Of a stretch of 64,000 nucleotides of DNA, positions 6,395-29,415 are shown one piece after another. The DNA is taken from NCBI GenBank assembly GCA_965235115.1, contig OZ249453.1, forward strand, positions 6,200,001-6,264,000, written 5' to 3'. The first letter of the stretch is position 1; every line of letters begins with the position of its first letter. The position numbers and the translations under genes were made by a program. Under the pieces are notes generated by a model. That model was not told where the DNA came from. It did not search any database and saw only the letters and a program-made list of their open reading frames with translations. Origin of the DNA: Laetmonice hystrix (Eukaryota).

Positions 6395-7554
6395 AGATAC
6401 CTGACGGTTGTAATTTTTGTTACCCAATCAAATGCTGATTTACTTTCTGGTTGAGCTGGGAGTGGCTATTGTCATTGATTTATGAACAACATCATTAAAA
6501 TAATCATCTCAGGTTATATAGAACCCACACCTGTAATGATAATGTTTTTATGACGTTGATCGAGGCAGGGGGAGTTGTGGTCAGTTTGATGATTTACATG
6601 ACTGGCCAGTGGTCAGTGAATGGGTGAGCGTCCCATGTGTGCAGAGACGCTGCCAGAGACCATGTTGACCGGGTTACCTGTCGATCTTACCTAACCCCAC
6701 AACACCTGTGATTAGCTCCGTGTGGCGGACCTCCCCCCCCCCTCCACCACCCAGCCCCCACCCCACTAGTTTATAACCCCCTCAGGGGTACCCAGGAACA
6801 GTTAATTACACAATGAGAGGAGGGGAACCGGGGTGGGGTAGGGTAATTAGGGGAAACAAGTAAAACCACCCTACCGTGATGGAAACTGACGGGCTGTCAC
6901 TCTGGCATGCTCCTGTTATGGCAAGCCATGAATAATGAATAGATTAAAGCGTTTTGTCCATTAATAGCCCTGCCATCCAGGTGTGTTATCTAAGGGAAGT
7001 TATTAGAATTCAGGCCTCACTGACACACTTCAATGGGAGCTTAAAATGTCCACTTTCCCCCAGACAAGGCCAGTCGCGGTGAGCACGGCTTTAACAGGGA
7101 CTTACAGCGCCCAGGGGACATTGACCTGAGAAAGGACATAGTATAGGGGTAATACCCTCGGGTGAGGGGGGCTGGGGGTGGGGTGGGGGTCGCCTCGAGG
7201 AGACAGAATTAGGTCACACCATTCAGGTAAAGAAATTTTCAGCCTGGCTACCAAATTGTGACGTTAAGACGCCAGGTGGTTGATATGCGGTTGTTGAGTA
7301 CGGTTGATATATGGTTGATACATGGTTGATACACGATTGTTGATATACAGGCGGGGAGGGGTGTGGAGGGGGCTATTGGCAGTAATGGGATTTTAAGGAG
7401 TTTAATGCCCAGTGGAAAGCGAAATGGATCACTCTCTTTTATGGGTCCTAGAATGTGGGGAAAATGCCTGATTAGAAAAGGTAGGGCGTTGAAGTTGATA
7501 TTTAAGATAAATAGATAAATAAATATTTAAATTGGGTCCAGCAGCGGAAGTACG

Positions 7555-7599
7555 CAAGCGTTAAGCCTTAACTTAAGTAAGATCTTAAAAACCAGGCCC
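7555..7599. mobile_element. Diverged terminal fragment of the same MITE family
   Basis: caagcgttaagccttaacttaagtaagatcttaa...aaccaggccc aligns to the reverse complement of 6276-6328. Confidence 0.5.
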
Positions 7600-7648
7600 T
7601 GGTGTCATCACAGACTTTGTCAGACCCGCCTGGTTTGCCGATTGAGGC

Positions 7649-7802
7649 AATCATTGCTAACGATCATTGCTAACGATCATTGCTAACAGTCATTGCTAAC
7701 AACCATTGCTAATAGTCGTTGCTAACAACCATTGCTAATAACCATTGCTAACAACCATTGCTAACAATCATTGCTAGCAATCATTGCTGACAATCATTGC
7801 TA
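7649..7802. repeat. 13-bp minisatellite
   Basis: cattgctaacaac/cattgctaacgat units, about 12 copies. Confidence 0.85.
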
Positions 7803-9676
7803 AGAGTTCAGAAGAGGTTTCCGACCCGTTGTGACAAGACGTTCTGTGAACAGTATCAAGCACAGTATCAACCACTGCTCATTAATTGAAAACACCTAGG
7901 TACACACTGATTAAAAACAAGATGATATTGACCATTTTAATTAGCCATGTTTATTAGGAAAGATCCTCTTGCTGTGCCCGTTCTGCGTATGTCCGATATA
8001 ATTAGCTGTACCAGTAGCTATGTTTCCTAGCGAGAGGAAAACTTCGCTGATTATATATTATTAGCGGTACAGTCCTTGACAACATGGGGGTATTAGTCCT
8101 TGTCGTGGTATTAAGTGGCGAGGACCCAAAATTCTACCAATACACCAATTTTATGGGATTTTACTATTACGAACTAATCCTCAAGGCTGTCCCTCGTGTT
8201 ATACTCATGTTGACACAGCCCCCCCCCCCCCCTTGTGGGGATCAGTGGAACTATCGGATATGTATCGCAGGTTTTTATTGGCCAGTTGTAACGAAGGCAG
8301 GCGTACCTCCAGACAGGCCGTGTTTTGTATATGATGATATATTGATATATACTATTACCCTGCGTCCATTGCCCCCTCCTGGGGGGGCGGAGGGGGGGGG
8401 GGGTGATTCTGTGGCAGTCAGATTATTTACATTTAGATATTGTTTGCTGTGGTGGCCCATATGTTGGTCGACTCTCGTAATGTGGAACCATCTCAACATG
8501 TCATTGATTCATGGAGAAACAAACTTCATCTGGTCCAAATATTGGACGATTTTACAGGATGGAATATAGCATTGATGTCTGAAAAAAAACTGAACGCGAT
8601 ATTTGTCCCCCCCCCTGATATTAACAATACTATTGGTGTGGTCTCAAGGGAGAGTGGTGAGGTATATTCGCCATGTACACCGACTGTGTACGGAGGGGGG
8701 GGGGCTTGGATACAATGATGATGTAGCGTTGGAATTGGATATTGCACTATCAAGATGGTAAGTGCTTTGACTCCTCCACGCACCTCTTACATTATCCATG
8801 TTCAGGGCACGTATTTCGGCTGATTTATAGCGATCCGACATGACATGATCCATGTTCGGGGCCGGGGCAGCGTAGCCGGCCTTGATGCGGTTGTCCACCC
8901 CTAGGGGGAGCCACCATCGACCCGGGATTTGACCGCATCCGTTGAAGTTGTCCATTAGTCATTACCACCCCCGCAATGTGTCAGCGACGTTTTCGATGTG
9001 AAAGACATGGCTGACATCCAAATGGCAATTACTGAAATGTAAGGGGGCTATATATGCACACCTACACCTGTACTCCATGGGGGTGGGGTGGGGGTAAAGG
9101 TTAAAGGTCGTCTCGCAGCTGGAAACGCCAACTGTAAAATGTACAATTATATGTTTTGACACATTGCTGCAGTTTAAAATGCATGGAGATGGTTTCCAAC
9201 ATATTTTCTGGGACTGATCTAACCTGTTTCCGGAATCACATAATTGGGTGATGTTTGGGATTGTATCCCACTGCACTGCGACTGGGGGGTGGGAGTGGGG
9301 TGGGGGTGAGGGTGGGAGTGAGGGTGGGATGGGGGTGGGGGTGAGGGTGGGGTGGGGGTGTTGGTGGGTCAAGTTGGTGACACCTCTTTGATTATACATG
9401 CTGTCAGTGTTTATGAAGTGCATGGTTTTATTTTGATTATTATACAAAGGGCGTTGGTGACGGGATACCTAGGTATTCCTGTATAGCTTGATTACATCAG
9501 AGACCCCCAGCCCCCCTCTCCCAGTCCCTGGCCCCCCAATCCATTATTCAGTGACGAACAAATGCCATCAAAACGCCGGCCGAATGCTGTCCCCGCTGTA
9601 AAAGGCCAGTTGGCAAACCTGGCAATCACGCAAACACTGCCAAGTGAACAAAATTGGCGAAACCTATCTCCCTCCC

Positions 9677-9748
9677 CTCCTCCTGCTCCTGCTGCTGCTG
9701 CTGCTGCTGCTGCTCCTCCTGCTCCTCCTCCTGCTGCTCCTCCTCCTC
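9677..9748. repeat. (CCT/GCT)n trinucleotide microsatellite
   Basis: cctcctgctcctgctgctgctgctgctgct...cctcct. Confidence 0.8.
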
Positions 9749-10435
9749 TCCGTGAACACAACGGTCAAATTTCGTGGCGATAGCATGGAGGTTCCACCAT
9801 GAAACTGGAGAATATGTTGAATGGTGTAATGGCTGATGTATTCATGGCTGGTAGAGTGGATTGGTGGAGTATATGTAGCAGCAGGTGGCCATCTGCATAT
9901 AACATCTGCTCATGTATGGCAGTTTCATGATGGAAACTTTATCTCTGTCTAGTGTGGCTCGTTTACCAATCGGGGCTCATATTACCTCGTATATATAGAT
10001 ATGTTAAGCCATACAATTTCATTTCACTGTCCTTGCGCTGATTGCGAAGTGAAATTGGTGTACGTTTTACGTTGTCATAAAAGTAGGGATTATTAAGTGA
10101 AACCATATATTCCGCTCTATTGGATGTCGGAATCAGCAACAACAAAAAATATTAAAAAAACACGTTTAAAGGAAAAAAGATAGGAAAGGACGTTGACAGC
10201 AACAATGTAGCCATATGAATTAAACTCCCCTCATCTCACTAGAAGGTGACCGAAAATCTGTCCAAGCAAGAAGATCCCTTATCATCCCTCCCTGTAGCCA
10301 AACAATGACTTAAAATTCACTCTCTGTAGCCAAAAGACGCCCTAACTGCCTGGATGGTGAGACTGGCAATTACGGACTCAAGTCTTGTATACTTGGAGAT
10401 GTGCTATCTCCGACACATTTTGGTGCCCCGCGCTG

Positions 10436-10501
10436 TCAGATGTCCCATGTCCTAGCCCTGCTGTCCCATGTCCCAGCCCTGCTGTCCCATGTCCCAGCCC
10501 C
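10436..10501. repeat. 21-bp tandem repeat x3
   Basis: ctgtcccatgtcccagccctg units. Confidence 0.75.
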
Positions 10502-11319
10502 GGAGCCAGTTTCTCAGTCGCCAGTTATGCGCTATCCTGGCTGAGCTCAGCAGATTAAAGGAGGACTAGCTGATATAAATAGACGACATGCACGAGACTC
10601 TATTTATGCCCAGACAGTTCTCCTTTAAGCTGCCTGCTCAGCTCGGCCCGCGCATAACCTCCGACTCAGAAACTGGCCTGTCCCATGGGCCTGATCTGAC
10701 CAGTGTCGCTGGGTCTGACCAAGGCTCTCCCAAGACCCCACCGTCCGTGTTTGCCAGAATCCTAGTTTACATTGGCCGTCGAGCGGTACCGCAGCCAAAT
10801 GAAATGTTTATGCACGTCTTCATATTTCCTTCGCACCACAAAAATCTGCGGCCATGCTTGGCGCTGTTTGAACAACTGGCCGTGCGAAATTGGATTCCTG
10901 GTGGACGGGGATGTCCCTTTCTTGTATCCTAATGGAATTCGGTTTGTCCAAGATGGCTGACACGCGATATATGTAAACAGTCGCGTGGACGTATTGTTTC
11001 GGTGAACAGTTATGGAAGGCGATCCGGTTTAGTTGGCTGACTAGGACGTCTGTCCTGGGGTGAGGTGACGGTGGGCTTTGTGGGGAACTTAAACCCGGTG
11101 GTAGGGGGTGGGGGCAGGGGCCCCGGGCTTCAGTTAATGGGGTATGTTTACTGTGGAGTATAGTGACATGTCATATCGGAGTATGGTTGGTCGTATGTAC
11201 AGTTAGCCCAGTGTTAGAAGAGGGCGAATATGATGTAAAGTACACCGGTTGGATGGGGTGACAGGTAAATTGTTTCAATCAGAGTCGCTCTTAAAGAGAG
11301 GCAAATAGGAAGATAGACG

Positions 11320-11612
11320 TGGCATGTTACATATAGAAGACGTATGACGTGACGTGAGTGACGTGACGCAGACGGACGCCATGACGTAACGTCTGACGTG
11401 ACGTGCGCGTTACGGCTCGCGGACGGACGCCATGACGTAATGTCTGACGTGACGTGTGCTGTATACGGCTCGCGGACAGACACCGTGACATAACGTTTGA
11501 CGTGACGTTGTGGGCGTTATAGCTCGCGGAGAGACGCCGTGACGTAACGTCTGACTTGACGTTGTGGCGTAACGTTTGACGTGACGTGGTGCGCGTCACG
11601 TGACGCAGACGT
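11320..11612. repeat. Degenerate CpG-rich TGACG repeat array
   Basis: Repeated tgacgtgacgt / atgacgtaacgtctgacg / gctcgcgga subunits. Confidence 0.75.
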
Positions 11613-14600
11613 CGCACAGAGTGGTGGGTTGATAGGTTCCACATCACGAAGGATCCAAAACGGGATCAGAACAAACTGGTTTACCAATCACACGCCGTTT
11701 AGATTTCATTTAGGCCCTGGTGAAGTCAGGATCGCTCCGACAGTGCGGAATGCAGGACAGGGTTTAAACGGTGGTATGGGGCGTCGGGATGGAGATGGGG
11801 TACGGGGACAACTCCTCCCTGATTGAGGGAAATAGGGGTCAATCGAAGATTAAATTTGGATTCTGTAGTCTGATTGGTTGGGATGGAGCTACCTTTCTGG
11901 GTGGTTAGTCCAGGATTTGACTGGAGCAAGGGGTGAATGAGGACAGGGAAGGTAAATAGGATCAGGAGGAGGACAAATTGTGTGCTGGCACACGGGGGGA
12001 GGTTGTTTGGGGAGATGATGGGGGGGGGGGGGGGGGCGCGTGGTTGAGGTGTAACCCTTGCTGTACCGACCGTAGTTCGGAGCCTTCACAGTTTGTCATA
12101 GTGTTGGTGTATGCCAAGGTCATGTCAGATTTTGAGTCTCGGAAAACGTGAACGGTGATGCCGATTAAACTTCGCCAATCTCATCCCAGGACATCTCGAC
12201 CGTGGCGATCAGAGTCCGGCTTGAAGCCCTACGATATGTGAGCCGAGATCTGGGCAGGAGGAGGAGGGGGGTCCTGATCAATGTCATCCGGAGGAGGGGT
12301 GGCGCTGAGCGTCCCTCATGATGGGGCTGGGGGTGGAGAGATGGGGGTACAGATGGGGGTGGACCGGCTCAGTATCCGTCAGAAAGCGGACAGTATAGAC
12401 ACCATGATGGTGATCCTAGGAATTGACCGGGATATCGGACGTGATATACGCCATACCAACGGCTCAACCAACGCCAATCCGTCCTGACATTGACCATGTT
12501 TGGGAACTCGTACCATAACTCAGCACACAAAACAACAAGTCCATGTCGGTGTGCAGACACAAGTCGGCCAGCCGGGGCACAGAACAGAATCTCTACTGAA
12601 CGCAATCTGATTGCAGGCCTAAACGACCGTTTTCTATGTGTTGTCTGACATTTATTTAGTGGTGGGGGAAGAAATTGCAGTTTTCCTCCCATATTAGACC
12701 GAAAGCTCTTACTTTTGCAGCACATACATAAAGATTACAGACAATTGCGTGAAATTGCTCAAGTATTTTGGCCACCGTATATGACCTTGACCTAACCGTG
12801 ACAATTTGAAGCTCCCAAATAAGGAAAAATCGCGCCATTATCCAGATATTCAAAAGTGAGCAAGTAATTGGTTGTTGTACGTTTTGTCGGCAAGATATTC
12901 AAACGACAGTTTTTATACGAGAAAGGGTCACGGGGCAGGAGGAAGAGAAGCGTTTCTTCTCACAACTGAAGGAAAATGGTCGAATTTGTTATATTTAACA
13001 GTTGTGGGGGCTGGATGCCGGTCATGCGCGACCGATACTGGTGGAGGTCCGAGAGAAACACCGCCTTGAGCAGTCAGTGTGTAGTCAGTTAATATGAACC
13101 GAGTTCAGTCAGTAAGATCCAGTCAGTTCGTCCTCCACTGTCCCTACGTTCCCAGCCTCCCACACTCCCATTCACAGCTGCGTCTCTCAGATAATGGAGG
13201 CGCCGGGACGCTGCGATCGCGACAAACGCAGGCCGATTGTCGGGTGAGAATATCTCCTGTCCTTGGCAGGATTAACTATTGCCACCTCCATTAGGGGCCT
13301 GATGTGAGTGCGGCACGCTGGGGGTTAGTCAACACTTCCCCCATCCCCCACTCAGCCCTGTTATTAGATTAAGGTACGACGCCATGGAGGAGTTTCTCCC
13401 AGCCTGTACCCGGAGTAAGCTCGGGGTTCCCACTAATCCACGGCCGAAAACTCCACTCTCATAATCTACAGCCGAGCGAGCCTGGATGGATTCTTAAAAT
13501 CCACCCGATAGGGGGCGCTGTTGTTTATCCGTAATCCATGGCTATGGGAGCGGCTCTGCAAGTCTCATTCACTGTGGCAGGGAAAAAAATCATGGGGGGG
13601 GGGGGGTACCAGAACTGTCTTAATGGAAATGGGAGGCTGATTGTAGGGGCTGAAGAGATTTTGTGAGGGAGAAGCACTTCAGGGAGCTTTAGCGACCACA
13701 ATATGACTCAGGTTTAGAATAATTCTGAGCTGCAGAAGCTACGCGATGTGCCATGATATTCTGGTCATTGCCCACATTGTATTGGTTTTCTAAAGCAATG
13801 TTGGAAAATTGGTTCGGGTACTTCACGCCAAAGACGTGTGAGCATTTAATACTTTTTTTCATGGTTCTCTCGGATTCAAACTACATGTAAATGCCAGCAT
13901 AATGGCACCTCTGTTAGTTTTTGATACTCTTTCGCTCAGCCTGTACCTGGGTAGTTACTTGAGATGGTTTCAGTGAGTGTACTTTCCGTATTCTATCCCA
14001 ACCGCTCCCTATACAGTGATTATATAGACCTAGCCGTCCGACATACAGGGAACGAACGCAGGTAGAGATGTCACCTTTGGCCCGATCTTTTGACTGCCTC
14101 GAGGTTGTAAGGCTATACCAGCTGCATTTCCACTGATAGCTCTGGAATTAAGCCAGAATTGAAACAACTTTTTCTGTGAAGTGTCAGTGGCACGGCCTCC
14201 ATGGTGGGCCAGGGGGGTTGTAAGTAGTTGGAGGGCTACAATTTGTCATGTCTTCCCTGGCAATCGCCCTCACAAAGGAGCTCAGGTTGGGAGCAGAGGC
14301 CGGGGTAAAAACTGGAGCCGCAATGGTAGGAGTGGGTCTGAGAGGTGCTGGTGAAACCAAGGGGGCGTGATGGGGAGTGAAACGTACGACACTGTCAACC
14401 AGTTATTACTGTAACCACGCCATCATTACATCCACCACATGGTAATCTTGTATAGAGGTCCTAACTTGGACGGTTACTGTAGAGTTTAAGGATAACTCCT
14501 GTATAGGGAGCGTTCTACTGCAGCGTTATATACGACACCAGGTAATGCCGTCCTATTAGGTCCATTAGAAAAACGCATGTTTTTTCCTGACTGGAGGCGT

Positions 14601-14681
14601 TGGTATTTTTTACCTGTAAGGTTCATTATCTGGTTTGGATCTGTGTAAAGGTGTGAATAATAACACCTGGCAGTTATAGGG

Positions 14682-15122
14682 GTGGCAATTACACCTGGGC
14701 CGGGTGGTAATCACACCTGGGCCGGGTGGCAGTCACACCTGGGCCGGGTGGCTGGCGGGAACGACACCCAAGTCTATTGGTGTCGTTATGGGATGCTCGG
14801 TATATGCTGGGACATTTTATTCTGGGACACCCCGTCTTCTGGGATACTCCCTCTCTGGGACAGTCCGTTTTGTGGGACAGTCCGTTTTGTGGGACAGTCC
14901 GTTTTCGGGGACCCTCCGTTTTAGGGGACACTCCGTTTTAGGGGACACTCCGTTTTAGGGGACACATGATGGTATCAGTAGGACAACCGTCAAATTCACG
15001 TACAATAGGTATCCTGGGACATGTCTTATCCTGGGACATGTCTTATCCTGGGACGTCTTATCCTGGGACATGTCTTATCCTGGGACATGTCTTATCCTGG
15101 GATATTTCTTATCCTCGGACAC
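14682..15122. repeat. Compound minisatellite block: 22-bp, 17/18-bp and 17-bp units
   Basis: cacacctgggccgggtggtaat (14682-14755), gggacagtccgttttgt / ggggacactccgtttta (14796-14965), tatcctgggacatgtct (15010-15122). Confidence 0.8.
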
Positions 15123-16769
15123 CCGCTGTGTGTTGTGATAAAGAAAAAGTATTTTTCTGGGGTCCAGTTTCAGAAAGTGAAGCGTCGGTTCTTGTAACCC
15201 AACCTAAGACGTGGAATTCACGTTGCATTTTACAGATTTCATATCGTTCAAAATGTTGGCGAACTGGGGGTTACAAAGACACTAACAAAGCAGTTCTGCT
15301 ATGTCTGACATAAAAAGGACCTAAAGATTCAGTTTCAACTCTGACAACTCGTTGGAGTTTATTTATTTGTCTGAACGCATCAGGAAATATCCTCTCAGAA
15401 GTTGGTGGAGTCCTCCCCCAAACTCCGAGCACACACGCCCAGAACCTCGGCAGAATTCCAGCCATGTTTTGGCAGACTGGATAAAAAGTGTCTCGATCAG
15501 AAAATGCACTTGAAGTCAGGAGTAGCAAAACAAGTTCGGGTTGGATTGAGGAAGGCTCTGTGAAATGTCCCGATGATGTTTACAGATAAGGCTGAGTTTG
15601 AGCAGAAAGTTGGTGAAAGTTGATGCAAGAAAAACAGCGGTAGGATGACAGGTTGGACACAGGAGTGTTGACCTAGTCGGACTGAGATCCTCAAGGAAAT
15701 ATTTGCCGATAAGGTCATCAGGTTTTCAGATGAGAGGAGGTGATATCGGGGGGGGGGGGGGGGGGGGGGGTTCTGGGGAGGAACTCCGGAGCTTTCACAC
15801 AAACATAGACGACCGCACTGGGGCCTTGACAACAACATCGCAAGACGAAGCAGGCATCATTTCAAGATGCCGATACAGGGCTGGTAGAAAAAAAATATCA
15901 GGGGAAGCTTGCTTTCCTGTTGTTATGTGGACGATATCCTGCTCGTAACTCAGTGAGGTCTGATAACATTGTGTGTGTGTCTCCAGCGTACAGATCGAGT
16001 TATCAAAAGTCATGGAGTACAGGGTGCCAGATCTCACCCCACACCCCCTGATCGGTGATCCACCAACCTGAGCACCCTCCCGGATCAACGACCCGGAACC
16101 GATCCACCGATAACATGATTCAAAGTCACCTCTATGTAACTCCCATACTGAAGATCTCCAATCCCGCCATCATTTTTCGGCGGGAGAAAAAAAAACACAA
16201 TAGATTTGGACAGAAACTGCATTGAAAACGGGGCCAGTGGATGGGACAGTGAGAGCTTTACCTAATGTAATCTGCGGAGAGGTTGTGAGGACTGCAGGAG
16301 ATAGAAGGTTAGACCGGTGAGGGGAGGGGGGTCGGGACGCTGTAGGATAAAGGACAGCCCGTTGCGGAGACGAAGATTACAGCGAGTCTTTCGGTGCGCA
16401 CTCAAAAACAATCACCGCTTGATTTCAATCTATTTGAAGCTCGGGCCAGCCGTAGGTCGGACCGGCCTTGTCACAGGATCAGTCTTACAGTCATGTTGGG
16501 GCATTATTCTCGGGATGTAATGGAGACAGAACATGATGGAGTGGATGAAATAGGACCATGACCCTGCATTTTAACGTCTTTGATGAGCGGATCTGAAGAC
16601 CCGCACGCCGGGGTGGAGATAGGGTGGTCTGGTGGTGAGGAGGTGGGCCAGGCGGTGTGGTGATCGGGTATACGGGCAGTTTAACTCGGTGTTAAAAGGG
16701 GGCAGGTCTGTTCTGTCACTGTGGTAATTTATATATGTGCAGGATAAAAATGTGTGGGTTAAATTCTTG

Positions 16770-16805
16770 TCTGATGATGTGTTTTTTATTTGTTTTCAGG
16801 TAAGT
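16770..16805 (+). promoter_or_regulatory. Candidate recursive splice site RS1 (3' splice site immediately followed by 5' splice site)
   Basis: ctgat(branch-like)gatgtgttttttatttgttttcAG|GTAAGT; AG at 16798-16799, GTAAGT at 16800-16805. Confidence 0.7.
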
Positions 16806-16837
16806 GTTTTTGACCATCCTTCCATCCGGGTCGGTGG
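16800..16837 (+). other. Putative 38-nt cryptic RS-exon (frameshifting)
   Basis: A second donor TGG|GTAAGT at 16838-16843 follows the RS1 acceptor. Confidence 0.55.
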
Positions 16838-19680
16838 GTAAGTTATATTAAAACACCCCACGGAGCCATTTGATTCATTTATGAGGAGTAAAAATCCTCA
16901 GTAAAACGATATTGAATGTGATACTTATCTGAAAATAAGTCTCAGGGGGTGGTATTATGTAAAATAATCAATTTATGAGTGGGAAATCAATTTCTTACCT
17001 TTCATAATATATTTTAAGGCTTAACTTTACCTTTGGTCGTAACTTCACAGTGACTTATTATCAGACTTAAAACAAGTATAGATTTATTATAGAAAAACGC
17101 TAGTTTTGAATACTCTCCAGGTTTCCAGTAAACGAACCACCTGAAGGAACAGAGATACGGATTTAAAAACAGATTTAAATGTGTTTTTTTAAATAAACGT
17201 GTCACCGGGCAAATGGTATAAAAATAACCGCTGTAGGTGGTCCATTAAAATTGTAAAAGAGAAGAAAAAGTTTGTAGATAACGAAACTGGTTGAGGATCC
17301 GGATAACTGTGAAACGCCAAGTGTGTTGTTAATGGATTTTATTTGATTTTAAGAGACGTAATTTAATATCATCGTGGGAGTTAGATCAGTGAGGATAGGG
17401 TTATTATAATTACAGGTATGTGTTTTGGGACACCCTAGATCACCCTCAGATCGGAGGGTAGGGTGTCTAGTGTGTAGGGTACCCAGGTGGGTAGTGATTA
17501 GTAATCAGCAGGTAGGGTAAGGTCAACATTCCACAGATGTCCAGGTGGGGTACGGTTACCTGAGTCTGACCCAGACGGTCACCACATCAAATGATCGCCC
17601 TCATGTCTGTCTCGGAGTCAGATCCGGGAGGGTGTGTACAACTGTCTGGGGGAGATGGATCGATCTATTGGGGTGGTTGGAAGGGGGTGGGGGTAAGAGT
17701 TCTACCCTCTGAGTCAACCCTCCCAGACTGGGCTAGCACTCCTCGACCGTGGTCTGTGGTCCAGAGGTTAGTGCGGCAAGTTGGTACATTCTCAGGTGAT
17801 ATATTGTAAAATGTCACCATATGTCACCAAGTGTCACTACGTGTCACTTCAGGTATGTACAGAGTGATGCCCTGCAGCAATACGGGGATTTCCCTTCCCT
17901 GTGCCCCAAACAAGTCCCAATGGATCGAATCATCAAGATCCTGGACCTCCCGGTCAGTCCCCCCACGTTATGTCGTGTGACCTTCAATAAAACACTCCCC
18001 ATCTGTTTCTAGCTGTTGCCAGAATTTTTCAAACCACTCCAAATCAGGACTGATGTCATGTGTTTGCTGACAAATTAAAAACCAGTACATGTATTGATTT
18101 AAAGAAAACATTCTTCTGCTGTGATCGGATTCCAGAGGCCAGCATTCACAAAGTTTTTCTCAACATTGTGATGAAACATGGAAAGGTGGGGGTAAAAAAC
18201 GGGTTCAAAGTTACGAACAGGTTGTGTGGCCAGAGAATTGTCAGCACAAAGGATGGCATGATTCCAGCAAGGACACAAACACGGGCTCGCAATGCATCAT
18301 TAAAGTACACTGTAACCTCCGTGAGGATATCAATTTATAATTGTTTTAATAATTATATCAAAATTACCGAGTATTAATTGTCATTTTTGACCAGTTTTAT
18401 TAGTGTGAGTATAGGATACAGAGGTTTGTCATATACTTGATGGTTCCGTTCAGAATCTGTAGACTCACACAGGGTGAGTCGTGTGACTCAGGGTGGGACT
18501 AAAGGGGGCTGACTCAGAGGTTGGATTAGGTGTAGAATACGCAAGGATTACGGTGAGAATGAGGGATTAATGATGGATAAGACGGCACTAATCTGAACTG
18601 AGATAATCTATGAGAAATCCTGGCTGTAGTGGCACTGTAAGTATGAAATGATGGATTACGTGTCAAGGTTAGCTCTTACAGTAAGAGTTACTCTCATCTC
18701 ATGTTCCTGGAGGGATTATCATCCAGTGGTTGTAACTGAGACGTGGATTAACGTAACCGATGGGGAAACTGGCTCCTTAATCTACATTAGCCACTCAATA
18801 TTAGTGCGAATCCCCCCGGGTGATGCGGTCTGATTTAAGACAGGTACAATAAAGATGAGTTTGTCTTTTGTCAAAGTCTGCCTCGCCTGATCCATTGGCG
18901 TTGATCCCTTCAGGGAGGTGTACGCCACAGGTGTGTAGTGTAGTGTTTAGGGTTTCTCTGGATTAAGGAAATCTCCGGCGGGGAGTGAGAAGTGGTTGGA
19001 GGTAATCCATGGTTGGATAATCTTACCTTCCTCAGGGGTGTACAATCGGGTCTACCTGTGAGGACCAGGTGGAAGATTTGACAACTCGAAGCCAAACGAA
19101 ACCTGGCGCCGTGCTTGTAGCGGAGATGGAGACTGAAACTTATCTCAGCTCCGTGTAACTAGTTGGTCCAACCTGACTACACTCAACTGGCTCTGAGCAG
19201 AAGTTTCCAAGTAATAATAAAGATATATCGAGTCAGATTGGTATGTGTATGACCGGCAGTTTGTGTACAGTGTCTTACCAAACTGGTCATACTGTAACAT
19301 GAAGACTGAATGGAATATAGACCCCTAGCTGGGTCTATTTTCGAAGGGAGTCCATTTTCAATATCATACAATCACTGCCAACCTCTACTCGGAGGTCACA
19401 GTACCGCTAGAGGGCAGTAGGGTATGATCTGGTCATATCAGGTGTCAGCATTTATATCAACATTCTATATAATATTCATCTTTCCTGATTAGCTTACAGA
19501 ATTGTGAGTTCTACAAATAAGTTAATAAGCTACATCATTCACAATATATGACTTATCAAGTTGCTACAAATGTCAACGAAATCGTCTATGTAATATGTTG
19601 TAGATTGCTATGAAATATTATCTGAGAGTTATAAAGCTGGAGGTCTAGGATTGAGTAAGGAAGGATTCAGTGATCTCTAG

Positions 19681-20198
19681 ACAGTGGAGATTGATAGAAA
19701 AACATGAAACTCAAAGATTGAGTTAGACTGACAGACGCTAAAGGACTGTAGATGATTTGGTTGATATAGAAACAGTGCCAGTGTTTGTGATAGTGTCGCT
19801 AGCCATCAATAACCAGGTGCACCTTGGCTCTAGTCACTGTAAACGTATGTAATGATTCAGTGACGGTGACAGTGGAGATTGATACTCAAAGATTGAGTGA
19901 GATTGACAGAAGCTGAAGGACTGTAGATGATTTAGTTGATATAGAAACAGTGCCAGTGTTTGTGATAGTGTCGCTAGCCATTAATAACCAGGTGCACCTC
20001 AGCTCTAGTCACTGTAAACGTATGTAATGATTCAGTGACAGTGACAGTGGAGATTGATACTCAAAGATTGAGTTAGATTGACAGAAGCTAAAGGACTGTA
20101 GATGATTTGGTTGATATAGAAACAGTGCCAGTGTTTGTGATAGTGTCGCTAGCCATCAATAACCAGGTGCACCTTGGCTCTAGTCACTGTGAACGTAT
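19681..20198. repeat. ~175-bp tandem repeat x3
   Basis: acagtggagattgata...ctcaaagattgag...ctctagtcactgtaaacgtat starts at 19681, 19869 and 20044. Confidence 0.9.
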
Positions 20199-22626
20199 AA
20201 AAAACCGGGACAGGAAGGAACGACCCGGGCAGTGAATTACATGGTCATCCAGGTGAGATGATTGGCAATCAAAGCCAGGTGATAACCGCAGGTGATAGAG
20301 TCCCCCCGTGCACCCCTAGGGGGTGGCGTGGACAAACCAGCTACTGTGGTCAAGTCTCACGGCCACTGGCCTGGGTGGCTATTAACGATGTGATGTCTAC
20401 TCAGCTGGCCACTTGACCGCTGACTGGACAATACCAGAAATGGGGTCACGTCGGGAGGACATTATACCAGCGGTGGTCAGTGGCGTTTTGCTGGCGGGGA
20501 GAGTAGGTGGGGTGGTGTGGGTCTGACATTGTGGCTGTCCACATTTCGTTCCGTTTCCAGGAGGGTCATGATTTGTGTTTTTCTTGTAGTTACCCCTCCC
20601 CCAGTAGGCCGGGGGGTGAGGGTATGAGAGAGGGGGGTATGGAATGGACGGTGCGACCCTTCCCGACCCTAAAGGTCAAGGTGACCGCAGACATAGCGCA
20701 CGGTCCGTAATGGGGATTACACAGAGCAGACCGCTGACTGACTGGCCTAAAATAACCGCGGCTTGCTTGGACTGCGCAGATGGTCAGTGTAGGAAGGACT
20801 GAACATCAGTGTAGGGGGGAGACTGTATTAGTGCCTGGTCGCTCTGTTGGCTACATTGGAGTTTATGGTTCGCTATCAGCGTCCGAGCTTAATCAACGGT
20901 GGATATCTGGTAGTTAATTAAACAACCAGGCCATTGTTTTACCAGCCGATATATTGTGTGTTTTTACATGGGCATGATAGTGGTTAGTAAACTATGTGAG
21001 GGCTCTGGGTGTATTAAAAAGATCTGGGATCAGCTCGGTACAAGAGCATCGAGAGAGGTTTATATAGGGCTTGACATAGGCCAACTCGGGTGGGTGTGGA
21101 GGTGTTGGAGGGGTCGGGTGGGAGGGGTGGGGGTGGGATTGGGGACAGTACAAGACCTCCTGTCTTGGTCGCATTATAATATCATCAAAAGAGGCTCACA
21201 GACTCATAGAGTTACCGAGTAAATGAATGACGCAAGGTAGCTGCGTTCCTTCTCACAATACTAAATCTATTGCTCGCATGCTCCCCCATAATCCCATGCG
21301 ATCAGCCACTGGCTTAATCCGGTAGAACCATGCCCACGCCTGCAGTCAGACAGCGCCGTTTTTATTGGCCACACAACAAAAGAGATAAAAGGATACATGC
21401 ATCGAGCGGCTACAGTAATGGCGGCCAAATCTCGGCGCCGCGAGATTTACATTATGACGTGACGTAGAGAGAAGAGGCGCAGTTTTAAGAGAGGGGACTC
21501 GCGGGAGGTGATGGGATTATTCATCAGTCGCGAGATTATGGAAGGGTACAGGGACTGGAGGCGGCTGTCTGCACCCTTCATATTCCCACTCCGTCAAATC
21601 TAGTCTCGTTGGGGCAATCCACGTGTATGAAATGTATTGAAGAATGAAACGAAATCAGAGCGTAGAAAGTGGACGCCAGTAGTTATGGAGGGTAGTACAG
21701 ATTTACGCCGACAGAGGGCGGTGTTCTGTCGCATACCCTCCAAGAACCCTCTGTTTGTGACGTCATTATCCGGGATGACGCCGCAACTCGACACACAGAC
21801 GCCGTGCCTTTGATGGCGGCGTCTCGGAAAAGTCGACTCGAAGGTTGCGTGCGCAGTCAGGCCCCCGCTCCTTTGAAGGTACCCGGTAATAAACCAAGCC
21901 TTACTAATTTGATATCGTTGTCATGGTGACGCCAGTCACACCTTTGGTGTATAGGTTGTTTTTCTCAGACCTTGAGGTAATTTATATCTTTTTGTGAGTG
22001 TCTCTGTGATGTACGGCTCGGGTTTTACTTCAGTCAGATGCAGGTATAGGTGAATGCTCACATCAGCTCAGTCTAATCACTTTGCTCTAGGATCTGATCA
22101 CTCAGCTGTTGGGTCTGATCTCTTAGATGTGGGGTCTAGTAAGGGGTCTCGGGACTTTTAAGTATCGTCATCGAGGTGGAACGTATAAATAATCGTTTTA
22201 TAAAAATGTTTGCGATGCCATTCCATTTAGATAAGTCTCACGACCCGTAAACGGGAATAATTATAAAATCTGCTGTTATTGTTGGAATTTGATTGATATA
22301 AACCCGGATGTCTGGACATGGATAAATTGAATATTGATTTCTTCAGGACATAATATTGTAGACCTGTCTGGTTGATAACGTCGTAGTAACCATCTGCACT
22401 GGCCCGATTTGTTGGTAACCATCTGCTGTATCCATCTGTAATGGTCTGATTTGTCTGATACCATCTGCTCATTCCGTGTGTGTGGTGACTCAGGACCCGA
22501 CTAGACACCCGGCAACTGTCTGAGTACCAAGGACAGTTACATACGAACCGTTTAGTGTGCCCTTGTCCACCGATGCTCCACGGAAACAGGAACTTCTCTG
22601 TGTGGAGATTGGCGGAAGCTGACGTG

Positions 22627-24264
22627 GTTACCATGGCGACAGCTGCTGCTGATGGCGATTGGCTGTTGTGGCGGATTGGCCAATGGAGCACAGAACAGGA
22701 CCGGGCCCAACATCCGGGGAATGGCTATCCGATTATTGACCACCAGATGGCGCTCAGCCCCCACCAGGGGGCGCTCCGATAAGAGCCAATGTGGATTCTG
22801 AATCAACAGGCCGGGATGGGGGTGTGGGCACCCCACTGAAGGATCTGATGAGGGTGTTACAGTGTATAAGGTTTGAGGGGTTAAATCATGGTGAGGGTAT
22901 ATATCGTAGGAGTGGGGGGTAATCTACGTACCCCGATAGGGTACAGCAGGGCTGCCATGTCAGGGTTCAAGATTCATCAAGAGAGTGTTTAGTGGAGTAT
23001 CCCACCTGATGATCGCCTAGTCTCCCTCACCCTCAGTGCGGTCAGTCTGTTTGACCCCCTCCACTGGACATCAGCTGACCACACCGGGAGGGCGTCGTGT
23101 TAAAATATCCCCAGGCTGATGAAACAAGACGTGATGGTCAGACACGTGGCGGGAGGGTGACCGGTCAGGGCCAGCATCACGTGATTCACGTGTCCACCGC
23201 TATCTCCGGCCGATTTCTCCACCAGGGGGCGCCGTAAAGTGACCGCCAGGGGACCTGGCACTGTTCGGTTATGGTCACTTAGGGACCATACCTTGACCAC
23301 TCAATCAAACCTTTCCCACGCTTGGCACCTGAATCTCATGGCCAGCAGGGGCACCTTGCACTCAGGGTATTCACAAATTTGGCGATATTTTTACCAATTT
23401 ATATATAAACTGACGATATAACCTGAACTTGTCCCCAGACCGTCAGTGTATGCAGCATTAACTAGGTCATTAGGTCAAGGTCATTCTGAAGGTGATGCTG
23501 ATTACCGGATTGACGGAATGACCGGATGTTTGTAGCCCTTCCCGGAAACGGGTGTTATAGCGCCCCCTGGGGGATAAGATAGGTAGGTTAATCAGTGCCC
23601 CGCCACGCCAGGCCAAGCGCCAGGCCAAGCGCCAGGCACGCGAGGAGGGGGCGGGGGTCTGGGTTTACTGGTGGTCAGGCCGTAACTGACCGCACTTTGT
23701 TAATTAGGTCATCCCTGATTAAGAAGACGTGTGACATGATAAGAGTGAAGATGTCCGTGTAGCTCTGTGTAAATGAATTAGGTAAGATAGAAGAGAGAAG
23801 AAACAAAGAGACGTATCAACTGTCAGTGTGGTAATTGAGTGTGCTGACTATGGACTAACGGTTCGCCATTTGTGGCATTTATCGAGACCAACAGGCAAAC
23901 AATATTTTAATCAAATATCACATTCGTATGGAAAAGTAACGAAACCTAAAAGAGAGAAAATAAAATCGCGAGAATTTTCATTAATTTTATATATATGGAA
24001 TCGCGAGCATCTAGGTTGTATATTTGCGACCATATTAGGACAGAGTGTGTCGGATAATTTAGAACATGGTCTGCTCAAACCTATTTGTTGTAAAGAAGTC
24101 GTATTAAGTCGTCTGCCCGTGTCGCGCGTCCCCCAATTCGTGACAGGGAAGGTTTCCGCCTCGTTTGAGGCTCAGAACCCAAACGCTGTCATCGTGTCGT
24201 CCCCGTCCGGACGCAGGAACTGAGCACTTCCGGTTGTCATGACGCACGCAGCGCCACCTAGCGG
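22627..24264. promoter_or_regulatory. Cluster of CTCF-like motifs with RFX, CCAAT and ETS motifs
   Basis: CCACCAGATGGCGCT 22740, CCACCAGGGGGCGCT 22761, CCACCAGGGGGCGCC 23219 (all +); reverse copies at 23559 and 24250; GTTACCATGGCGAC 22627; CACTTCCGGTT near 24224. Confidence 0.55.
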
Positions 24265-27200
24265 TGCCATGCTCGCCCAAGCTGGTGATTGAAACGAGAC
24301 AAACTGTGAACGACGCCGTCAGAAGCTTCGATATTCACGCTTGATTTTCCACCCTTAAAGGTGTTAGTCCTTTTGAGGCGCAGACGTTTCAATCGCAGAG
24401 CGTTTCAAACCCGCCAGCAAATCCCTTTAGAGGGGGCAGCGCCACACAGCGGCACATTGATACATCACTGTTGATGGGGCCGCAGGGATCGCTACGAAAG
24501 GTCGCTAGGCGACGGGGGCCGGCATGGACCAATCAGAGAGAGGTCGACCGACCTGGAAGTGGGCAGCCATGATGGAAACCGTCCACAAAAGGAGCAGCGC
24601 TAATTGGTTACTAATTAGTCTGAACTAACGAGGGGTCATAGTGAGGTGAAGAAGGTGGCAAGAGTAGGGCATGGGAGTCCGTGTACGCTGTGAATGGCAT
24701 AGTTCTGGCCACGGTGACGTGGTGAGGACAGGACAACACCTGTCCCCACCTGTCCTATTTCTGTCCACTCCCTCTGCTAATTTTCCGATGCCAGACTATC
24801 TGCGATTTCAGATCAGACTCAGTTGGTGGGGCACTTCTCCATGGAAGGAGCGAGGGGTCTGACGTTTTCCATGGTAACGCGGGGGTGGGGTGAAGAGATG
24901 ACTGACTCATCGTGTCGGGGTCCCAGTGAACCCCTGGACGCTGTCAAGGACCCCCTGTGTGGGGGGTGGAGGAGTGGCTGGAGGAGGGTCTGTAGGAGAG
25001 GTTGGGAGTCAGGAGTGCTCACATTGAAGACCCGCTGTGTGCATGGAACTGTTGTCTGTCACATCTAACGTACCGACAGCCGCCCTGGAGGAGAGAGCTA
25101 CTCCAGGTTGTCTGGGGGAACCCTCTGCTAGCCTCTTCAGCCCCATTAGGGTTATCGGTGGACAGGGGTTTTACCCCTCCGGGTGGGGTTTGAGATGGGG
25201 CAGTTGAACTGTTTGTCATATAAACACTTTAATAGTTTGCCTCGATATATACGACTGGGTAGGGTCGGTGCAGGAGCCGACAATATGGGACAAACTGCCA
25301 TGGGATTGAAACCCTCAAGATGGCCAGTAATTGTCGGAATCTAAGAGCTTATTATAATGCTTCAAGAGTGGCTGGGTCCCGTGTCTATTCAACCTTTCAC
25401 GGAACTTGAAAGTAGTCTCCGTCGTAGTCAAATTCATAAACAAAAATTCTGTATAATGATTATGAAGTTAATGTATAGTTTATTTAGTCAATAGTCAATA
25501 CCAGTAAAGGTTAGACAGTTTAGACCTGGGCAGATTTCACGTAGTATTGAGACTGGAGTGGCGGTCAGTATTACCTACACCTGTCTGATCTGTCTACCTG
25601 TCTGAGACTGACCACTGGCCAGTCTGATCACCTCGAGGTGACCACCCTGCAGGTCGGAGTGTGAACTCAAGGTGTGACGTCACGTACAAAGATATGAAAG
25701 GGCCGTCGGTACCCGAACGTCCAGGTAACGTCCAGACAACACCTGAGATCTCATGACTGGCGCTAACAGGCGTCAGGCACACAACAACAGTCCCACCTCT
25801 GTCCTCTATTGCCCCCCCCCCCACTCCGAGTGACCTATGACACCTGTCAGTGACCCCCAGCGGGTACCTCACGGTGTCTATGGGGTGTTTATGGCGGGGG
25901 AGGAGGGCAGATACACGTGTAGAGGGGTTGAGTAACAGAGATCACCCAAACCACCCCATCATTGACACATCCATGGTGTCATTGACACATCCATGGTGTC
26001 ACTCACAACCCAATCGCCAGGCCACAATAAACGGCACACAACAGTTACCTAGATATATTGAAAGGTCAACCGACACTGGCCACCGTAAGTGATGGTCAGT
26101 CATTGCGGAGGTCGGATCCATTTGGCCACACACAATGAGCCGCCAGGTCCGGGCAGTGGTCAACAACTGACCAGAGGGATGGCGTCCGTACCTGGACAAT
26201 GGACCCACACGGCCCTGATGTCCAGTGATCAGCGGGCCTGGACACAAACGTAACGGCATCAGGTGCAGGTTTCAGACTTTGCCAAATGGATTTGAAGTTG
26301 TTTTTTTTGCAGCGTCCTTCTGTCAGTTTAAAACATCCTTTAATGTTTTCCCGAAGTTTTATCCGTTTCTGGCCGTCAGATCAAACATGTATCCGCTTAT
26401 GGATTAAAAAAACTAATCTGGATTTAGTGAATGGCAAAATGTCAGAAATAAACCATGTAGACCTCTACATTTTGGTGAAATATTCATAGGAGACAAGAAC
26501 CGCGGAGGTCATTATAGATTAGGCTTATATGGGATATAATAGAAGTCTAGGATATACATTGAATATAGGCATAATATCAATGGCTACCAGAATCTCGCAT
26601 TACCCGGTAAAAATCCTCTTTCACATTTCGAACTTTCCCATGCCGTGCAGAGATTGTTTCGTATAGCGTTCATCAGATGTGATCAGTGAGGACGCACAGA
26701 CAGGCCATGGTGACGTCAATGTCGCCGACGTTTGTCGACAGAGGGCGTGACGTGACGACTGGGCAGATATCGGTTAATGAGGGGATCTGTGGCATGTATA
26801 ACAACCCCCCCGTACGTCTCACCTGAGTGGTGATTAGTTTTTGTCTCTCACCTGTTGGTAGTCTCACCCGTATAGGATTAGAACTACATACATGGATATC
26901 AGACTCTCATAATCTCAGGCTGGGAGGTTATCTTTATCTGTTAGACTCGCTAACTTTCGTAACTTTGTGATACACGATTCTCTCTGACATTGAGGGCGGG
27001 GTAGGGGAGGAACAACATGTTACTATCTATATACGTACACGGGTACTTGCCATGCTCAACTGAATGATGGCATCGAATCTACAAATGGGCCAGGATTCTC
27101 TTCACCAGTACGATTGACATTGAACACCATAGGGCCTACCATACCCCCACCATCTACCCACCCCCACCCCGACACCAGACCTTGTGACTCTGACCTTGAC

Positions 27201-27732
27201 CCCACCGTCACGTGATCGACGTAACGTGATCCAGATTCAATCTCCCAACTTCTTGTATAACCTGACCAGTATCTGCCATCTCTCTCCCACCCCAGGTCCC
27301 CAGACCCCCCCCCCCCCGACGTATTCTGCCTGGTGGGTCCAAGTTTATTCCTATCTTATCTAAACCTCCACCTTGGCCTTTCACTGACTTCTCCCTACCT
27401 CTCTGCGTTCCATGGCGACCACCAACGTGCTAGTTACCATAGCAACATAAACTTTATGTACATGGAAATGTCGGGTTTATCACTTAGATCTGCCCGACAT
27501 GTTAGCCCTTGGTCGTTCCTGGGAGGTATATTCACACAGCTAAGTCGTCTTTCCGTGCTCCAACAAGTTTTAGAATCCTCTTTTATTGCTGAGTTGTTAT
27601 AAAGTCGGGCCTGGGTTGTCTGGAGTATCTTCCGACATGATTTATAATTTTGTAATCTTTCTGCTGATTGGTTAAACATCTTGGTTGTTGTATTGATAAA
27701 TGTAATAAGCTGATTGGTTGCTTCCTCCCATC

Positions 27733-28185
27733 TCACCTGATTGGTTGATATTGTGTCATGTGATGAGCCTGTCGAACCAGACAGTACCTGATTGGTTGAT
27801 ATTGTGTCATGTGATCAGCCTGTCGGTCCAGACAGTACCTGATTGGTTGATATTGTGTCATGTGATCTGCCTGTCGGACCAGACAGTGCCTGATTGGTTG
27901 ATATTGTGTCATGTGATCAGCCTGTCGGTCCAGACAGTACCTGATTGGTTGATATTGTGTCATGTGATCTGCCTGTCGGACCAGACAGTACCTGATTGGT
28001 TGATATTGTGTCATGTGATCTGCCTGTGGGACCAGACAGTACCTGATTGGTTGATATTGTGTCATGTGATCAGCCAAACAGTACCTGATTGGTTGATATT
28101 GTGTCATGTGATCTACCTGTGGGACCAGACAGTACCTGATTGGTTGATATTGTGTCATGTGATCTACCTGTCGGACCAGACAGTA
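27733..28185. repeat. 51-bp minisatellite containing CTGATTGG (reverse CCAAT box)
   Basis: gtacctgattggttgatattgtgtcatgtgatcagcctgtcggtccagaca, about 9 copies; produces the 17-aa periodic ORFs. Confidence 0.9.
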
Positions 28186-29249
28186 GATTATCTTCAGACT
28201 TTATGATTAAGAAAGGAACGGGAGACAAGGAGAGATGAAGTATGGGTGATATCCTAGGATGTAATCCTCTGCCCTCACGTATTCTCAGCTAGACGTAATC
28301 AGATTACTCCATTATGCGTGGTATTCACGAGAATGGCTCTCTGCGGATAGGCTGAGGGCGTGATATCACATTCTGACACAGCAACACGCAGTCCCGGGGT
28401 ATAAACTGACACACGTCAGAGATCCCCCCCACCCCTAAAAAAAAAGAACATAGCAGACATCCCTGAAGGTCTTCACATGAAAAAAGGTGTCAGGCCCAGC
28501 ATGGGTTCGGAGCGGGTCCCATTTGTAGCCCGCCGGTCGAACAGTGGGGGCAGGATGTAAGGGGGGTGGGGTGTGGGGGGGTTACCCCTGGGCGTCGAGG
28601 GCGGGCGCTGGGCCAGATGGACGCACTTTGAAGGTTGGTGTGAACTTGGCTTAAAACGACGGGCAGTGATATGAAGTAAAATTACCACTTTGGAATCTAA
28701 TATTACCAGACTAACCATTTTACCAACCAAGGTCGCCAATGGCAACCGTGGTGGAAACAAGTGTTACCAATGACAACCAGATAAAGATATATCAATATCT
28801 GTGTTAGCAGCCGCGTCCACGAGACCAGTACACATTGTAGCAGTGTGAAACTATTCCATCACGTTGGGAGTGTTACACATTCGACACAGGAAACTATATA
28901 CGCATCAACACCTTTTTCCAAGATATTTTTTCACTGTCTTGCACTAGATGGAGTATTCCACTTTTTGATGTGAACTTTTCAGTAGATTAACCACGGATTA
29001 AAAACTTACAGGACCGCCCGTAGCTAATCCTGTCCGCCCTTGTGGAGTGACCCGGGAGATGTCTATAAAAAATAACATCCCAAGGGTCAGGAGCACAGCC
29101 TGGAGTAATTCTCACCCTCCTCCCTGGAGGAGGGATCTTGGTGGTCTCGAGTATATAGTTTGAGACAGAGGTCGGTGGTAACTATGGGAACAAGTGAATA
29201 AAGCCAAGATGATACAAATGTTTTCAATATGCCATGTTTGACATGTGTT

Positions 29250-29284
29250 CTGATATGATATTTTCTTGTGTTTTTCAGGTAAGT
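29250..29284 (+). promoter_or_regulatory. Candidate recursive splice site RS2
   Basis: ctgat(branch-like)atgatattttcttgtgtttttcAG|GTAAGT; AG at 29277-29278, GTAAGT at 29279-29284. Confidence 0.7.
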
Positions 29285-29415
29285 TTGCTGATGGTAGGGA
29301 GTAAAAAGTTGGCAGTGGTCCTGGTACCTCTTGGCACCAGAAGGTGAAGTACATAATGAAGGTAAAGTCAGATTACACATGTATATTTTGAGGATTATCC
29401 TGATGCTAAGATCAG
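29279..29415 (+). other. Putative 137-nt cryptic RS-exon (in-frame stop; poison exon)
   Basis: Consensus donor CAG|GTGAGT at 29416-29421; read in frame after the upstream exon it reaches TGA after 22 codons. Confidence 0.55.

What the first reader, a model, noticed from the sequence alone, without database searches (positions are those of the whole stretch)
16800..16843. RS1 is followed by a 38-nt cryptic exon ending in a second GTAAGT donor (RS-exon / frameshift cassette)
Seen: TGG|GTAAGT lies 38 nt after the RS1 acceptor. Established: recursive sites in vertebrates and Drosophila are recognised by exon definition of a short RS-exon, and the regenerated donor competes with the downstream donor. 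Computed: inclusion of 38 nt shifts the frame of the next exon, reaching TAG at 48010-48012, far upstream of the next junction. Inference: it either defines RS1 or acts as an NMD-coupled switch lowering Eph output.
Basis: partly seen in the sequence, partly recalled or inferred. Interest (0 to 1): 0.72.

Follow-up and report, generated by a model that had tools for sequence, protein, structure and literature searches.

The report
Decoy mini-exon behind a recursive splice site
Deep inside a 44.5-kb intron of an invertebrate Eph receptor gene, an "intron end fused to intron start" site is followed 38 bases later by a second intron-start signal. This is the short decoy exon that flies and vertebrates use to cut long introns out in steps, it recurs across this genome, and no RNA data exist to show it in use.

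Summary
The tract ttttcag|GTAAGT ends its AG at 16799, a second GTAAGT starts at 16838, and the interval is 38 nt. Including it shifts the Eph frame to a TAG at 48010-48012.

It is not a repeat copy and is unlikely to be chance. I collected 76 other unique, pyrimidine-rich TTTNCAG|GTAAGT sites from this 627-Mb genome. Of these, 43 carry a donor-like site 20-80 nt downstream on the same strand, against 11.8% in control windows (p about 1e-20). The distance peaks at 40-60 nt with a median near 52. Sites with a poor pyrimidine tract and the antisense strand show no such excess.

RS1 therefore has the build of the fly-type ratchet point with a cryptic RS-exon. The donor regenerated on exon 2 (GGG|GTAAGTGT) pairs better with this animal's U1 than the +38 donor (-12.2 vs -10.3 kcal/mol). 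The mini-exon is thus most likely recognised and then skipped.

The "NMD switch" reading is possible but has no support. Only DNA runs exist for this animal, and cross-species conservation could not be tested.

The scan has already reported this architecture on other DNA of the same genome. It is a new member of a known kind.

The parts
3260..3357 (+). Eph exon 2 (98 nt). It ends in phase 0 with ...GTTGGG, followed by gtaagt.
   Evidence: A relative's gene model joins the equivalent exon directly to the LBD exon.
3358..47903 (+). The 44,546-nt intron that holds RS1 and RS2.
16771..16775 (+). Branch-point-like CTGAT, with the A at -26 from the splice point. RS2 has the same motif at the same distance.
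16780..16799 (+). RS1 acceptor: T-rich pyrimidine tract plus CAG (15 of 20 pyrimidines).
16800..16805 (+). RS1 ratchet donor GTAAGT. After ligation to exon 2 it reads GGG|GTAAGTGT, with U1 duplex -12.2 kcal/mol.
16800..16837 (+). 38-nt cryptic RS-exon. It has no internal stop in the exon-2 frame and its length is not a multiple of 3.
16838..16843 (+). RS-exon donor TGG|GTAAGTTA, with U1 duplex -10.3 kcal/mol. The second allele keeps the hexamer.
29279..29415 (+). Sister site RS2 (same 13-mer TTTTCAGGTAAGT). Its downstream donors are AAG|GTGAAG at +65 and CAG|GTGAGT at +137.
47904..48576 (+). Eph exon 3 (ligand-binding and cysteine-rich domains).
48010..48012 (+). TAG reached if the 38 nt are retained.

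Best explanation
RS1 (16799|16800) is a recursive splice site, or ratchet point, of the Eph exon-2/exon-3 intron. The stretch 16800-16837 with the donor at 16838 is its cryptic RS-exon. Inferred mechanism: U2AF/U2 at the CTGAT, pyrimidine tract and CAG, together with U1 at the +38 donor, define the 38-nt unit as an exon. Exon 2 is then spliced to 16800, which removes the first 13.4 kb. The junction recreates a donor (GGG|GTAAGTGT) that outcompetes the +38 donor. The next splice, to RS2 or to exon 3, therefore starts at the junction and discards the 38 nt. If the +38 donor wins instead, the mRNA gains 38 nt, shifts frame and stops at 48010-48012, which would make it an NMD target. What is shown: the sequence anatomy, single-copy status, the genome-wide association of such sites with a donor about 50 nt downstream, the U1 pairing ranking, and the frame consequence. 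What is inferred: every step that involves RNA.
For: The anatomy is. The exact 13-mer TTTTCAGGTAAGT occurs only 88 times on both strands of 627 Mb, and 37 of those copies lie in repeat families or one tandem array. Two unique copies nevertheless sit on the sense strand of this one intron. From the count of unique copies I calculate about 0.002 expected. For the TTTTCAG set, 26 of 35 unique pyrimidine-rich sites have a donor-like site at +20..+80, against 1-6 of 35 in control windows; the antisense strand shows none, and the poor-tract set shows 3 of 14. The independent TTTVCAG set repeats this with 21 of 45 against a control mean of 6.1; at the stricter 6-of-7 donor rule it is 11 of 45 against 0.6, and the poor-tract set shows 8 of 36 against 6.6. 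Pooled without RS1, RS2 and two tandem repeats, 43 of 76 sites have such a donor against 11.8% expected, p = 9e-21, with a peak at 40-60 nt. The median distance is 52.5 nt with an interquartile range of 42-65. A distance of 38 nt is the 17th percentile and several other sites have 37-39 nt. The lengths show no preference for multiples of three (21/19/14), as expected of non-coding decoy exons. This genome's U1 starts ATACTTACCTG. Duplex energies are -12.2 kcal/mol for the regenerated donor and -10.3 for the RS-exon donor. The second allele carries a 7-nt insertion directly behind the donor yet keeps TGG|GTAAGTTT. The published fly architecture matches: a cryptic RS-exon of about 50 nt, out of frame, poorly conserved, with the ratchet-point donor stronger than the RS-exon donor (PMC8605326; PMC6110457).
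Against: There is no RNA of any kind. The only public runs are three DNA runs of one sample, so neither the 3357|16800 junction, nor use of the 16838 donor, nor a sawtooth read profile has been seen. Cross-species conservation could not be tested. The pairing advantage of the regenerated donor is small (1.9 kcal/mol) and both donors share the hexamer GTAAGT. At 38 nt the unit is at the short end for exon definition. The motif alone is a poor predictor in this genome: the raw excess is 88 against 35 for TTTTCAG and 129 against 123 for TTTVCAG, and many copies come from repeats. The allele data do not discriminate, because one haplotype has no differences at all over 690 nt around the site.
Confidence: 0.66

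Rival explanations
1. Regulated poison exon. The 38-nt unit is included in a controlled share of transcripts so that NMD tunes Eph receptor dosage.
For: Inclusion gives a frameshift and a stop 564 nt before the next junction. The +38 donor has a perfect GTAAGT and ranks in the stronger 39% of RS-exon donors in this genome. Its pairing energy is only 1.9 kcal/mol below that of the regenerated donor. The vertebrate model is described in PMC5126111.
Against: There are no RNA data. The regenerated donor pairs better with U1. The same build recurs at dozens of unrelated sites with no frame pattern, which fits a generic recognition device better than a gene-specific regulator. In flies such exons are almost never seen in mRNA (PMC8605326). 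No unusual RNA structure surrounds the donors (z = -0.57).
Confidence: 0.12
2. Chance. RS1 may or may not be used, and the GTAAGT at 16838 is a coincidental hexamer without function.
For: By the loose 5-of-7 rule, a donor-like site falls within +20..+80 of any point of this intron with p about 0.19. About a quarter to a half of pyrimidine-rich sites in the genome lack one.
Against: For the exact hexamer p is about 0.015. The genome-wide excess at exactly this distance and strand has p about 1e-20. The sister site RS2 also has downstream donors. The allele with a 7-nt insertion preserves the hexamer.
Confidence: 0.12
3. An ordinary expressed exon, either of a non-coding or alternative Eph transcript or of another gene on this strand, that merely happens to begin with GTAAGT.
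For: Such exons exist. One of the genomic sites (L028) is a 92-nt open frame that reads like a WD-repeat, judged by eye only.
Against: The 38 nt break the Eph frame. The length class (median 52 nt, no multiple-of-3 bias) is unlike coding exons. The region has no other copy and no Rfam match.
Confidence: 0.05

Closest known systems
Drosophila intronic ratchet points with cryptic RS-exons (Burnette 2005; Duff 2015; Joseph 2018 and 2021, PMC8605326; Pai 2018, PMC6110457)
   Same: Both have a juxtaposed pyrimidine tract-CAG|GTAAGT deep in a long intron of a developmental or neuronal gene and several sites per intron. Both have a short cryptic exon of about 50 nt closed by a downstream donor, which is out of frame. 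In both, the ratchet donor is stronger than the RS-exon donor.
   Different: The animal group is different (a non-insect invertebrate; earlier scan notes call it a probable annelid, which I did not check). Use is not shown by RNA here. The motif is far less enriched over background than fly papers report. At 38 nt the unit is shorter than the typical unit.
Vertebrate RS-exons and the 'binary switch' model (Sibley 2015; Blazquez 2018, PMC6224609; review PMC5126111)
   Same: An RS-exon is defined first. The reconstituted and the downstream donor then compete, and inclusion introduces a premature stop.
   Different: Vertebrate cases are few in long introns and are mostly annotated exons held in by the exon junction complex. 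Here the build looks like the fly type that is skipped by default, and the role of the EJC is unknown.
Ubx microexons m1 and m2 (Hatton 1998, as cited in PMC8605326)
   Same: Short exons that begin with their own donor inside a very long intron.
   Different: The Ubx exons are 51 nt, in frame, ultraconserved and expressed. The unit here is 38 nt and shifts the frame.

Membership tests
Recursive splice site with cryptic RS-exon (fly type) | A 3' splice site directly abutting a 5' splice site (YAG|GTRAGT) on the sense strand, deep in a long intron | tested here: met
   CAG|GTAAGT at 16797-16805, 13.4 kb into a 44.5-kb intron.
Recursive splice site with cryptic RS-exon (fly type) | A functional-looking acceptor context (pyrimidine tract, branch point) | tested here: met
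   15 of 20 pyrimidines. CTGAT with the A at -26, identical in RS2.
Recursive splice site with cryptic RS-exon (fly type) | A downstream donor that closes a short cryptic exon (about 50 nt) | tested here: met
   TGG|GTAAGT at +38. In the genome, 43 of 76 comparable sites have one at +20..+80 against 11.8% expected, with a median near 52 nt.
Recursive splice site with cryptic RS-exon (fly type) | The regenerated ratchet donor is stronger than the RS-exon donor | tested here: met
   U1 duplex -12.2 vs -10.3 kcal/mol, using this genome's own U1 5' end. This is only a proxy and the margin is small.
Recursive splice site with cryptic RS-exon (fly type) | The cryptic exon is out of frame or carries a stop | tested here: met
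   38 nt, frameshift, TAG at 48010-48012.
Recursive splice site with cryptic RS-exon (fly type) | RNA intermediates: exon-to-RS junction reads, sawtooth coverage, lariats | not testable with these tools
   No RNA run exists for this organism; only three DNA runs of one sample.
Recursive splice site with cryptic RS-exon (fly type) | Strong evolutionary conservation of the acceptor|donor motif | tested here: inconclusive
   The nearest readable relative (55% identical LBD) has a 1.6-kb intron here and no RS-like site. The two alleles of the sequenced animal both keep the motif and the +38 hexamer.
NMD-coupled poison exon | Premature stop well upstream of the last exon junction on inclusion | tested here: met
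NMD-coupled poison exon | Regulated inclusion seen in RNA and stabilised by NMD block | not testable with these tools
   No RNA data.

The most novel reading that the evidence does not exclude
The two donors share a perfect GTAAGT and differ by only about 2 kcal/mol in U1 pairing. RS1 might therefore work as a tunable switch in which a regulated share of Eph transcripts keeps the 38 nt and is destroyed by NMD. That would couple removal of the long intron to receptor dosage in a lophotrochozoan nervous system.
Probability: 0.12. Interest if true: 0.65.

Novelty: new member of a known kind. Interest (0 to 1): 0.45.

Why it matters
Recursive splicing with cryptic RS-exons has been shown in insects and vertebrates. 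My full-text search found no paper on it in annelids: the only paper holding both terms was unrelated. This site, together with the genome-wide peak of donors 40-60 nt behind such sites, suggests that the same exon-definition device operates in a third animal lineage. If so, it would be old rather than a fly speciality. There is also a practical point for gene annotation and variant reading. A change at 16800-16805 would be predicted to force the 38 nt into the Eph mRNA and inactivate it. The work also shows that counting the motif alone is unreliable in this genome. Two repeat families carry the motif, and the pyrimidine tract plus a downstream donor is what separates real candidates from noise.

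Tried and rejected
RNA evidence: the look-up of sequencing runs with exon 3 returned only three runs of one sample, none recorded as RNA. Laid on 13801-19800, they behave as genomic DNA contigs with no joints at RS1.

Conservation: a profile-free search of 1.84 billion representative proteins gave a best full match of 55% identity and fragments of 76-89%. The 55% relative (GCA_964204645.2) has its exon-2/exon-3 intron reduced to 1.6 kb and no RS-like site in 38 kb, so it says nothing either way.

Repeat origin is rejected, because 16600-17000 matches only itself in the genome. A tandem-repeat explanation is also rejected.

Structured RNA around the donors is rejected (z = -0.57), and there is no Rfam family in the whole window.

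A stricter motif of 11 uninterrupted pyrimidines gave only 26 hits against 14 controls. Tracts here are T-rich but interrupted, so that motif was too strict to be useful.

The Pai 2018 supplements do not list Eph among fly recursive genes.

I did not check the phylum. 'Probable annelid' comes from earlier scan notes only.

Full report
WHAT IS THERE

The window carries part of an Eph receptor gene on the + strand. Exon 3 (47904-48576) encodes the ephrin-binding and cysteine-rich domains, with Pfam Ephrin_lbd at E 9e-47 and Ephrin_CRD at E 9e-18. Its best solved relatives are EphA4, EphA2 and EphB2. Exon 2 is 3260-3357 and ends on a full codon (...GTT GGG|gtaagt). A relative's gene model joins the equivalent exon directly to the LBD exon. 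The intron between them is therefore 3358-47903, or 44,546 nt.

At 16770-16843 the sequence reads as follows:
- CTGAT, with its A at 16774, which is -26 from the splice point;
- a T-rich tract;
- CAG ending at 16799;
- GTAAGT at 16800;
- 32 further bases;
- TGG|GTAAGT with the GT at 16838.

The interval is exactly 38 nt. In silico, exon 2 + 38 nt + exon 3 reads through the 38 nt without a stop. It then shifts frame and ends at TAG 48010-48012, which is 564 nt before the exon-3 donor.

IS IT MORE THAN CHANCE?

Taken alone, the hexamer is only moderately unlikely. There are 11 sense-strand GTAAGT in the intron, so the chance of one landing in +20..+80 is about 0.015. Under a looser donor rule (GT plus 5 of 7 consensus positions) it is 0.19. 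The region is single copy in the 627-Mb genome, is not a tandem repeat and matches no Rfam family.

The stronger evidence is genomic. The 13-mer shared by RS1 and RS2, TTTTCAGGTAAGT, occurs 88 times, against 35 for the reversed control. Of these, 32 fall in four repeat families and 5 in one tandem array.

I split the unique copies by pyrimidine content in the 20 nt before the AG.
- Of 35 copies with at least 13 pyrimidines, 26 carry a donor-like site at +20..+80 on the same strand.
- Control windows of equal size elsewhere in the same 1-kb pieces give 1-6 of 35.
- The antisense strand shows no excess.
- The 14 copies with poor tracts show 3 of 14.

An independent set, TTTVCAGGTAAGT, has no raw excess at all: 129 hits against 123 for the control. 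It nevertheless gives the same split. Of 45 pyrimidine-rich sites, 21 have a donor against a control mean of 6.1. At the stricter 6-of-7 rule the count is 11 against 0.6. Of 36 poor-tract sites, 8 have one against 6.6.

Pooled, and leaving out RS1, RS2 and two tandem repeats, 43 of 76 sites have such a donor against 11.8% expected (p = 9e-21). The positional profile peaks sharply at 40-60 nt and falls to background by about 100 nt. The median distance is 52.5 nt, with an interquartile range of 42-65. The value 38 nt sits at the 17th percentile, next to several sites at 37-39 nt. Lengths show no preference for multiples of three.

The +38 donor of RS1 therefore belongs to a recurrent, strand-specific and distance-constrained architecture.

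Two unique copies of a 13-mer this rare sit on the sense strand of one intron. From the count of unique copies I calculate about 0.002 expected. This argues that RS1 and RS2 are themselves real signals. No other site of comparable quality lies in the intron on either strand.

HOW IT MOST LIKELY WORKS

The build matches what is published for Drosophila. There, ratchet points are recognised through a short cryptic RS-exon (about 50 nt, variable, poorly conserved, usually out of frame) that is closed by a downstream donor. After the first splice, the regenerated ratchet donor outcompetes the RS-exon donor, so the cryptic exon never reaches the mRNA. Weakening the ratchet donor forces inclusion and inactivates the gene (PMC8605326; also PMC6110457).

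I tested the competition step with a proxy. This genome's U1 genes begin ATACTTACCTG. Duplex energies with that 5' end are:
- exon-2 natural donor: -11.7 kcal/mol;
- regenerated RS1 donor GGG|GTAAGTGT: -12.2 kcal/mol;
- RS-exon donor TGG|GTAAGTTA: -10.3 kcal/mol.

The ranking fits the skip-by-default rule, but the margin is small. The RS-exon donor is of ordinary strength for its class, in the stronger 39%. No unusual RNA structure covers the two donors.

Every step that involves RNA is inferred.

THE NMD-SWITCH READING

The frameshift and early stop are real, so any included transcript should be unstable. Nothing here shows that inclusion happens or is regulated. The fact that dozens of unrelated sites share the build, without any frame pattern, points to a generic recognition device. 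I keep this reading as a minority possibility.

WHAT COULD NOT BE TESTED

RNA: the only public runs holding exon 3 are three runs of one sample, none recorded as RNA. Laid on 13801-19800, they cover the intron evenly like genomic DNA and show no joints. They do reveal a second allele with nine single-base differences at 16528-16714. That allele also has a 7-nt insertion directly behind 16839, which still leaves TGG|GTAAGTTT. This is compatible with constraint on the hexamer. It is weak evidence, however, because one haplotype is identical to the reference for 690 nt around the site.

The nearest readable genome (55% identity) has only a 1.6-kb intron at this position and no RS-like site. That is uninformative, because short introns need no ratchet.

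RELATION TO EARLIER SCAN NOTES

The scan has already flagged many such sites elsewhere in this genome, including on other contigs, so this is not a first sighting. I confirmed the lack of RNA data. I could not reproduce a 'ten-fold over chance' enrichment from motif counts alone. The raw excess is 2.5-fold for one core and nil for another, and much of it comes from repeats. The discriminating signal is the combination of a pyrimidine tract with a donor about 50 nt downstream. I did not check the phylum assignment ('probable annelid').

VERDICT

The best reading is a fly-type recursive splice site with a 38-nt cryptic RS-exon that is recognised and then skipped (confidence about 0.66). It is a new member of a known kind and of moderate interest. 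The interest lies mainly in the genome-wide signature, which extends the RS-exon mechanism to a lineage where my literature search found no report.

Noticed in passing
G000 genome-wide; examples L001, L007, L010 (family 1) and L002, L024, L025 (family 2): Two dispersed repeat families (at least 16 and 11 copies) and two smaller ones carry the exact motif TTTTCAGGTAAGT with a purine-rich upstream context. They account for about a third of all genomic hits and are false positives for any motif-only scan for recursive sites.
   Followed up: partly
window 16839/16840: A second allele in run X3 has a 7-nt insertion (AAGTTTG) directly behind the GT of the +38 donor. The donor hexamer is unchanged. 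Nine single-base differences cluster at 16528-16714.
   Followed up: partly
window 60610-63608: A 3-kb G-rich minisatellite with a 49-nt unit and about 61 copies at 89% match. It has strong GC skew and gives long spurious open frames on both strands. Further arrays follow up to 64000.
   Followed up: no
window 49557-49953 and 52989-53490: A near-perfect 33-nt tandem array (12 copies, 99% match) and a G-rich array with 24/39/63-nt periods, both in the intron after exon 3.
   Followed up: no
L178 (GCA_964204645.2, OZ123232.1:5644160-5682395): A relative's Eph gene (LBD 55% identical) has the same exon 2 / exon 3 junction but only a 1.6-kb intron there. Its long intron (14.6 kb) lies between exons 1 and 2, and no RS-like site is present in 38 kb.
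   Followed up: partly
L028 (G000:C5:11571409-11572421): One of the genomic TTTTCAG|GTAAGT sites is followed by a 92-nt open frame reading ...SGDKTAKIWDVATGNM... and a GTAAGT donor. By eye this looks like a real WD-repeat coding exon that begins with its own donor signal, so it is a candidate expressed RS-exon.
   Followed up: no
window 29279-29421: RS2 has the same 13-mer and the same CTGAT at -26 as RS1. It has weak donors at +65 and a consensus CAG|GTGAGT at +137, so its cryptic exon may be either about 65 nt or 137 nt.
   Followed up: partly
G000:C5:25.91-25.99 Mb, C1:71.07-71.20 Mb, C19:20.35-20.37 Mb: U1 snRNA genes stand in several tandem clusters, with at least 42 copies above the Rfam cut-off. 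The four copies read (L081-L084) have the canonical 5' end.
   Followed up: no
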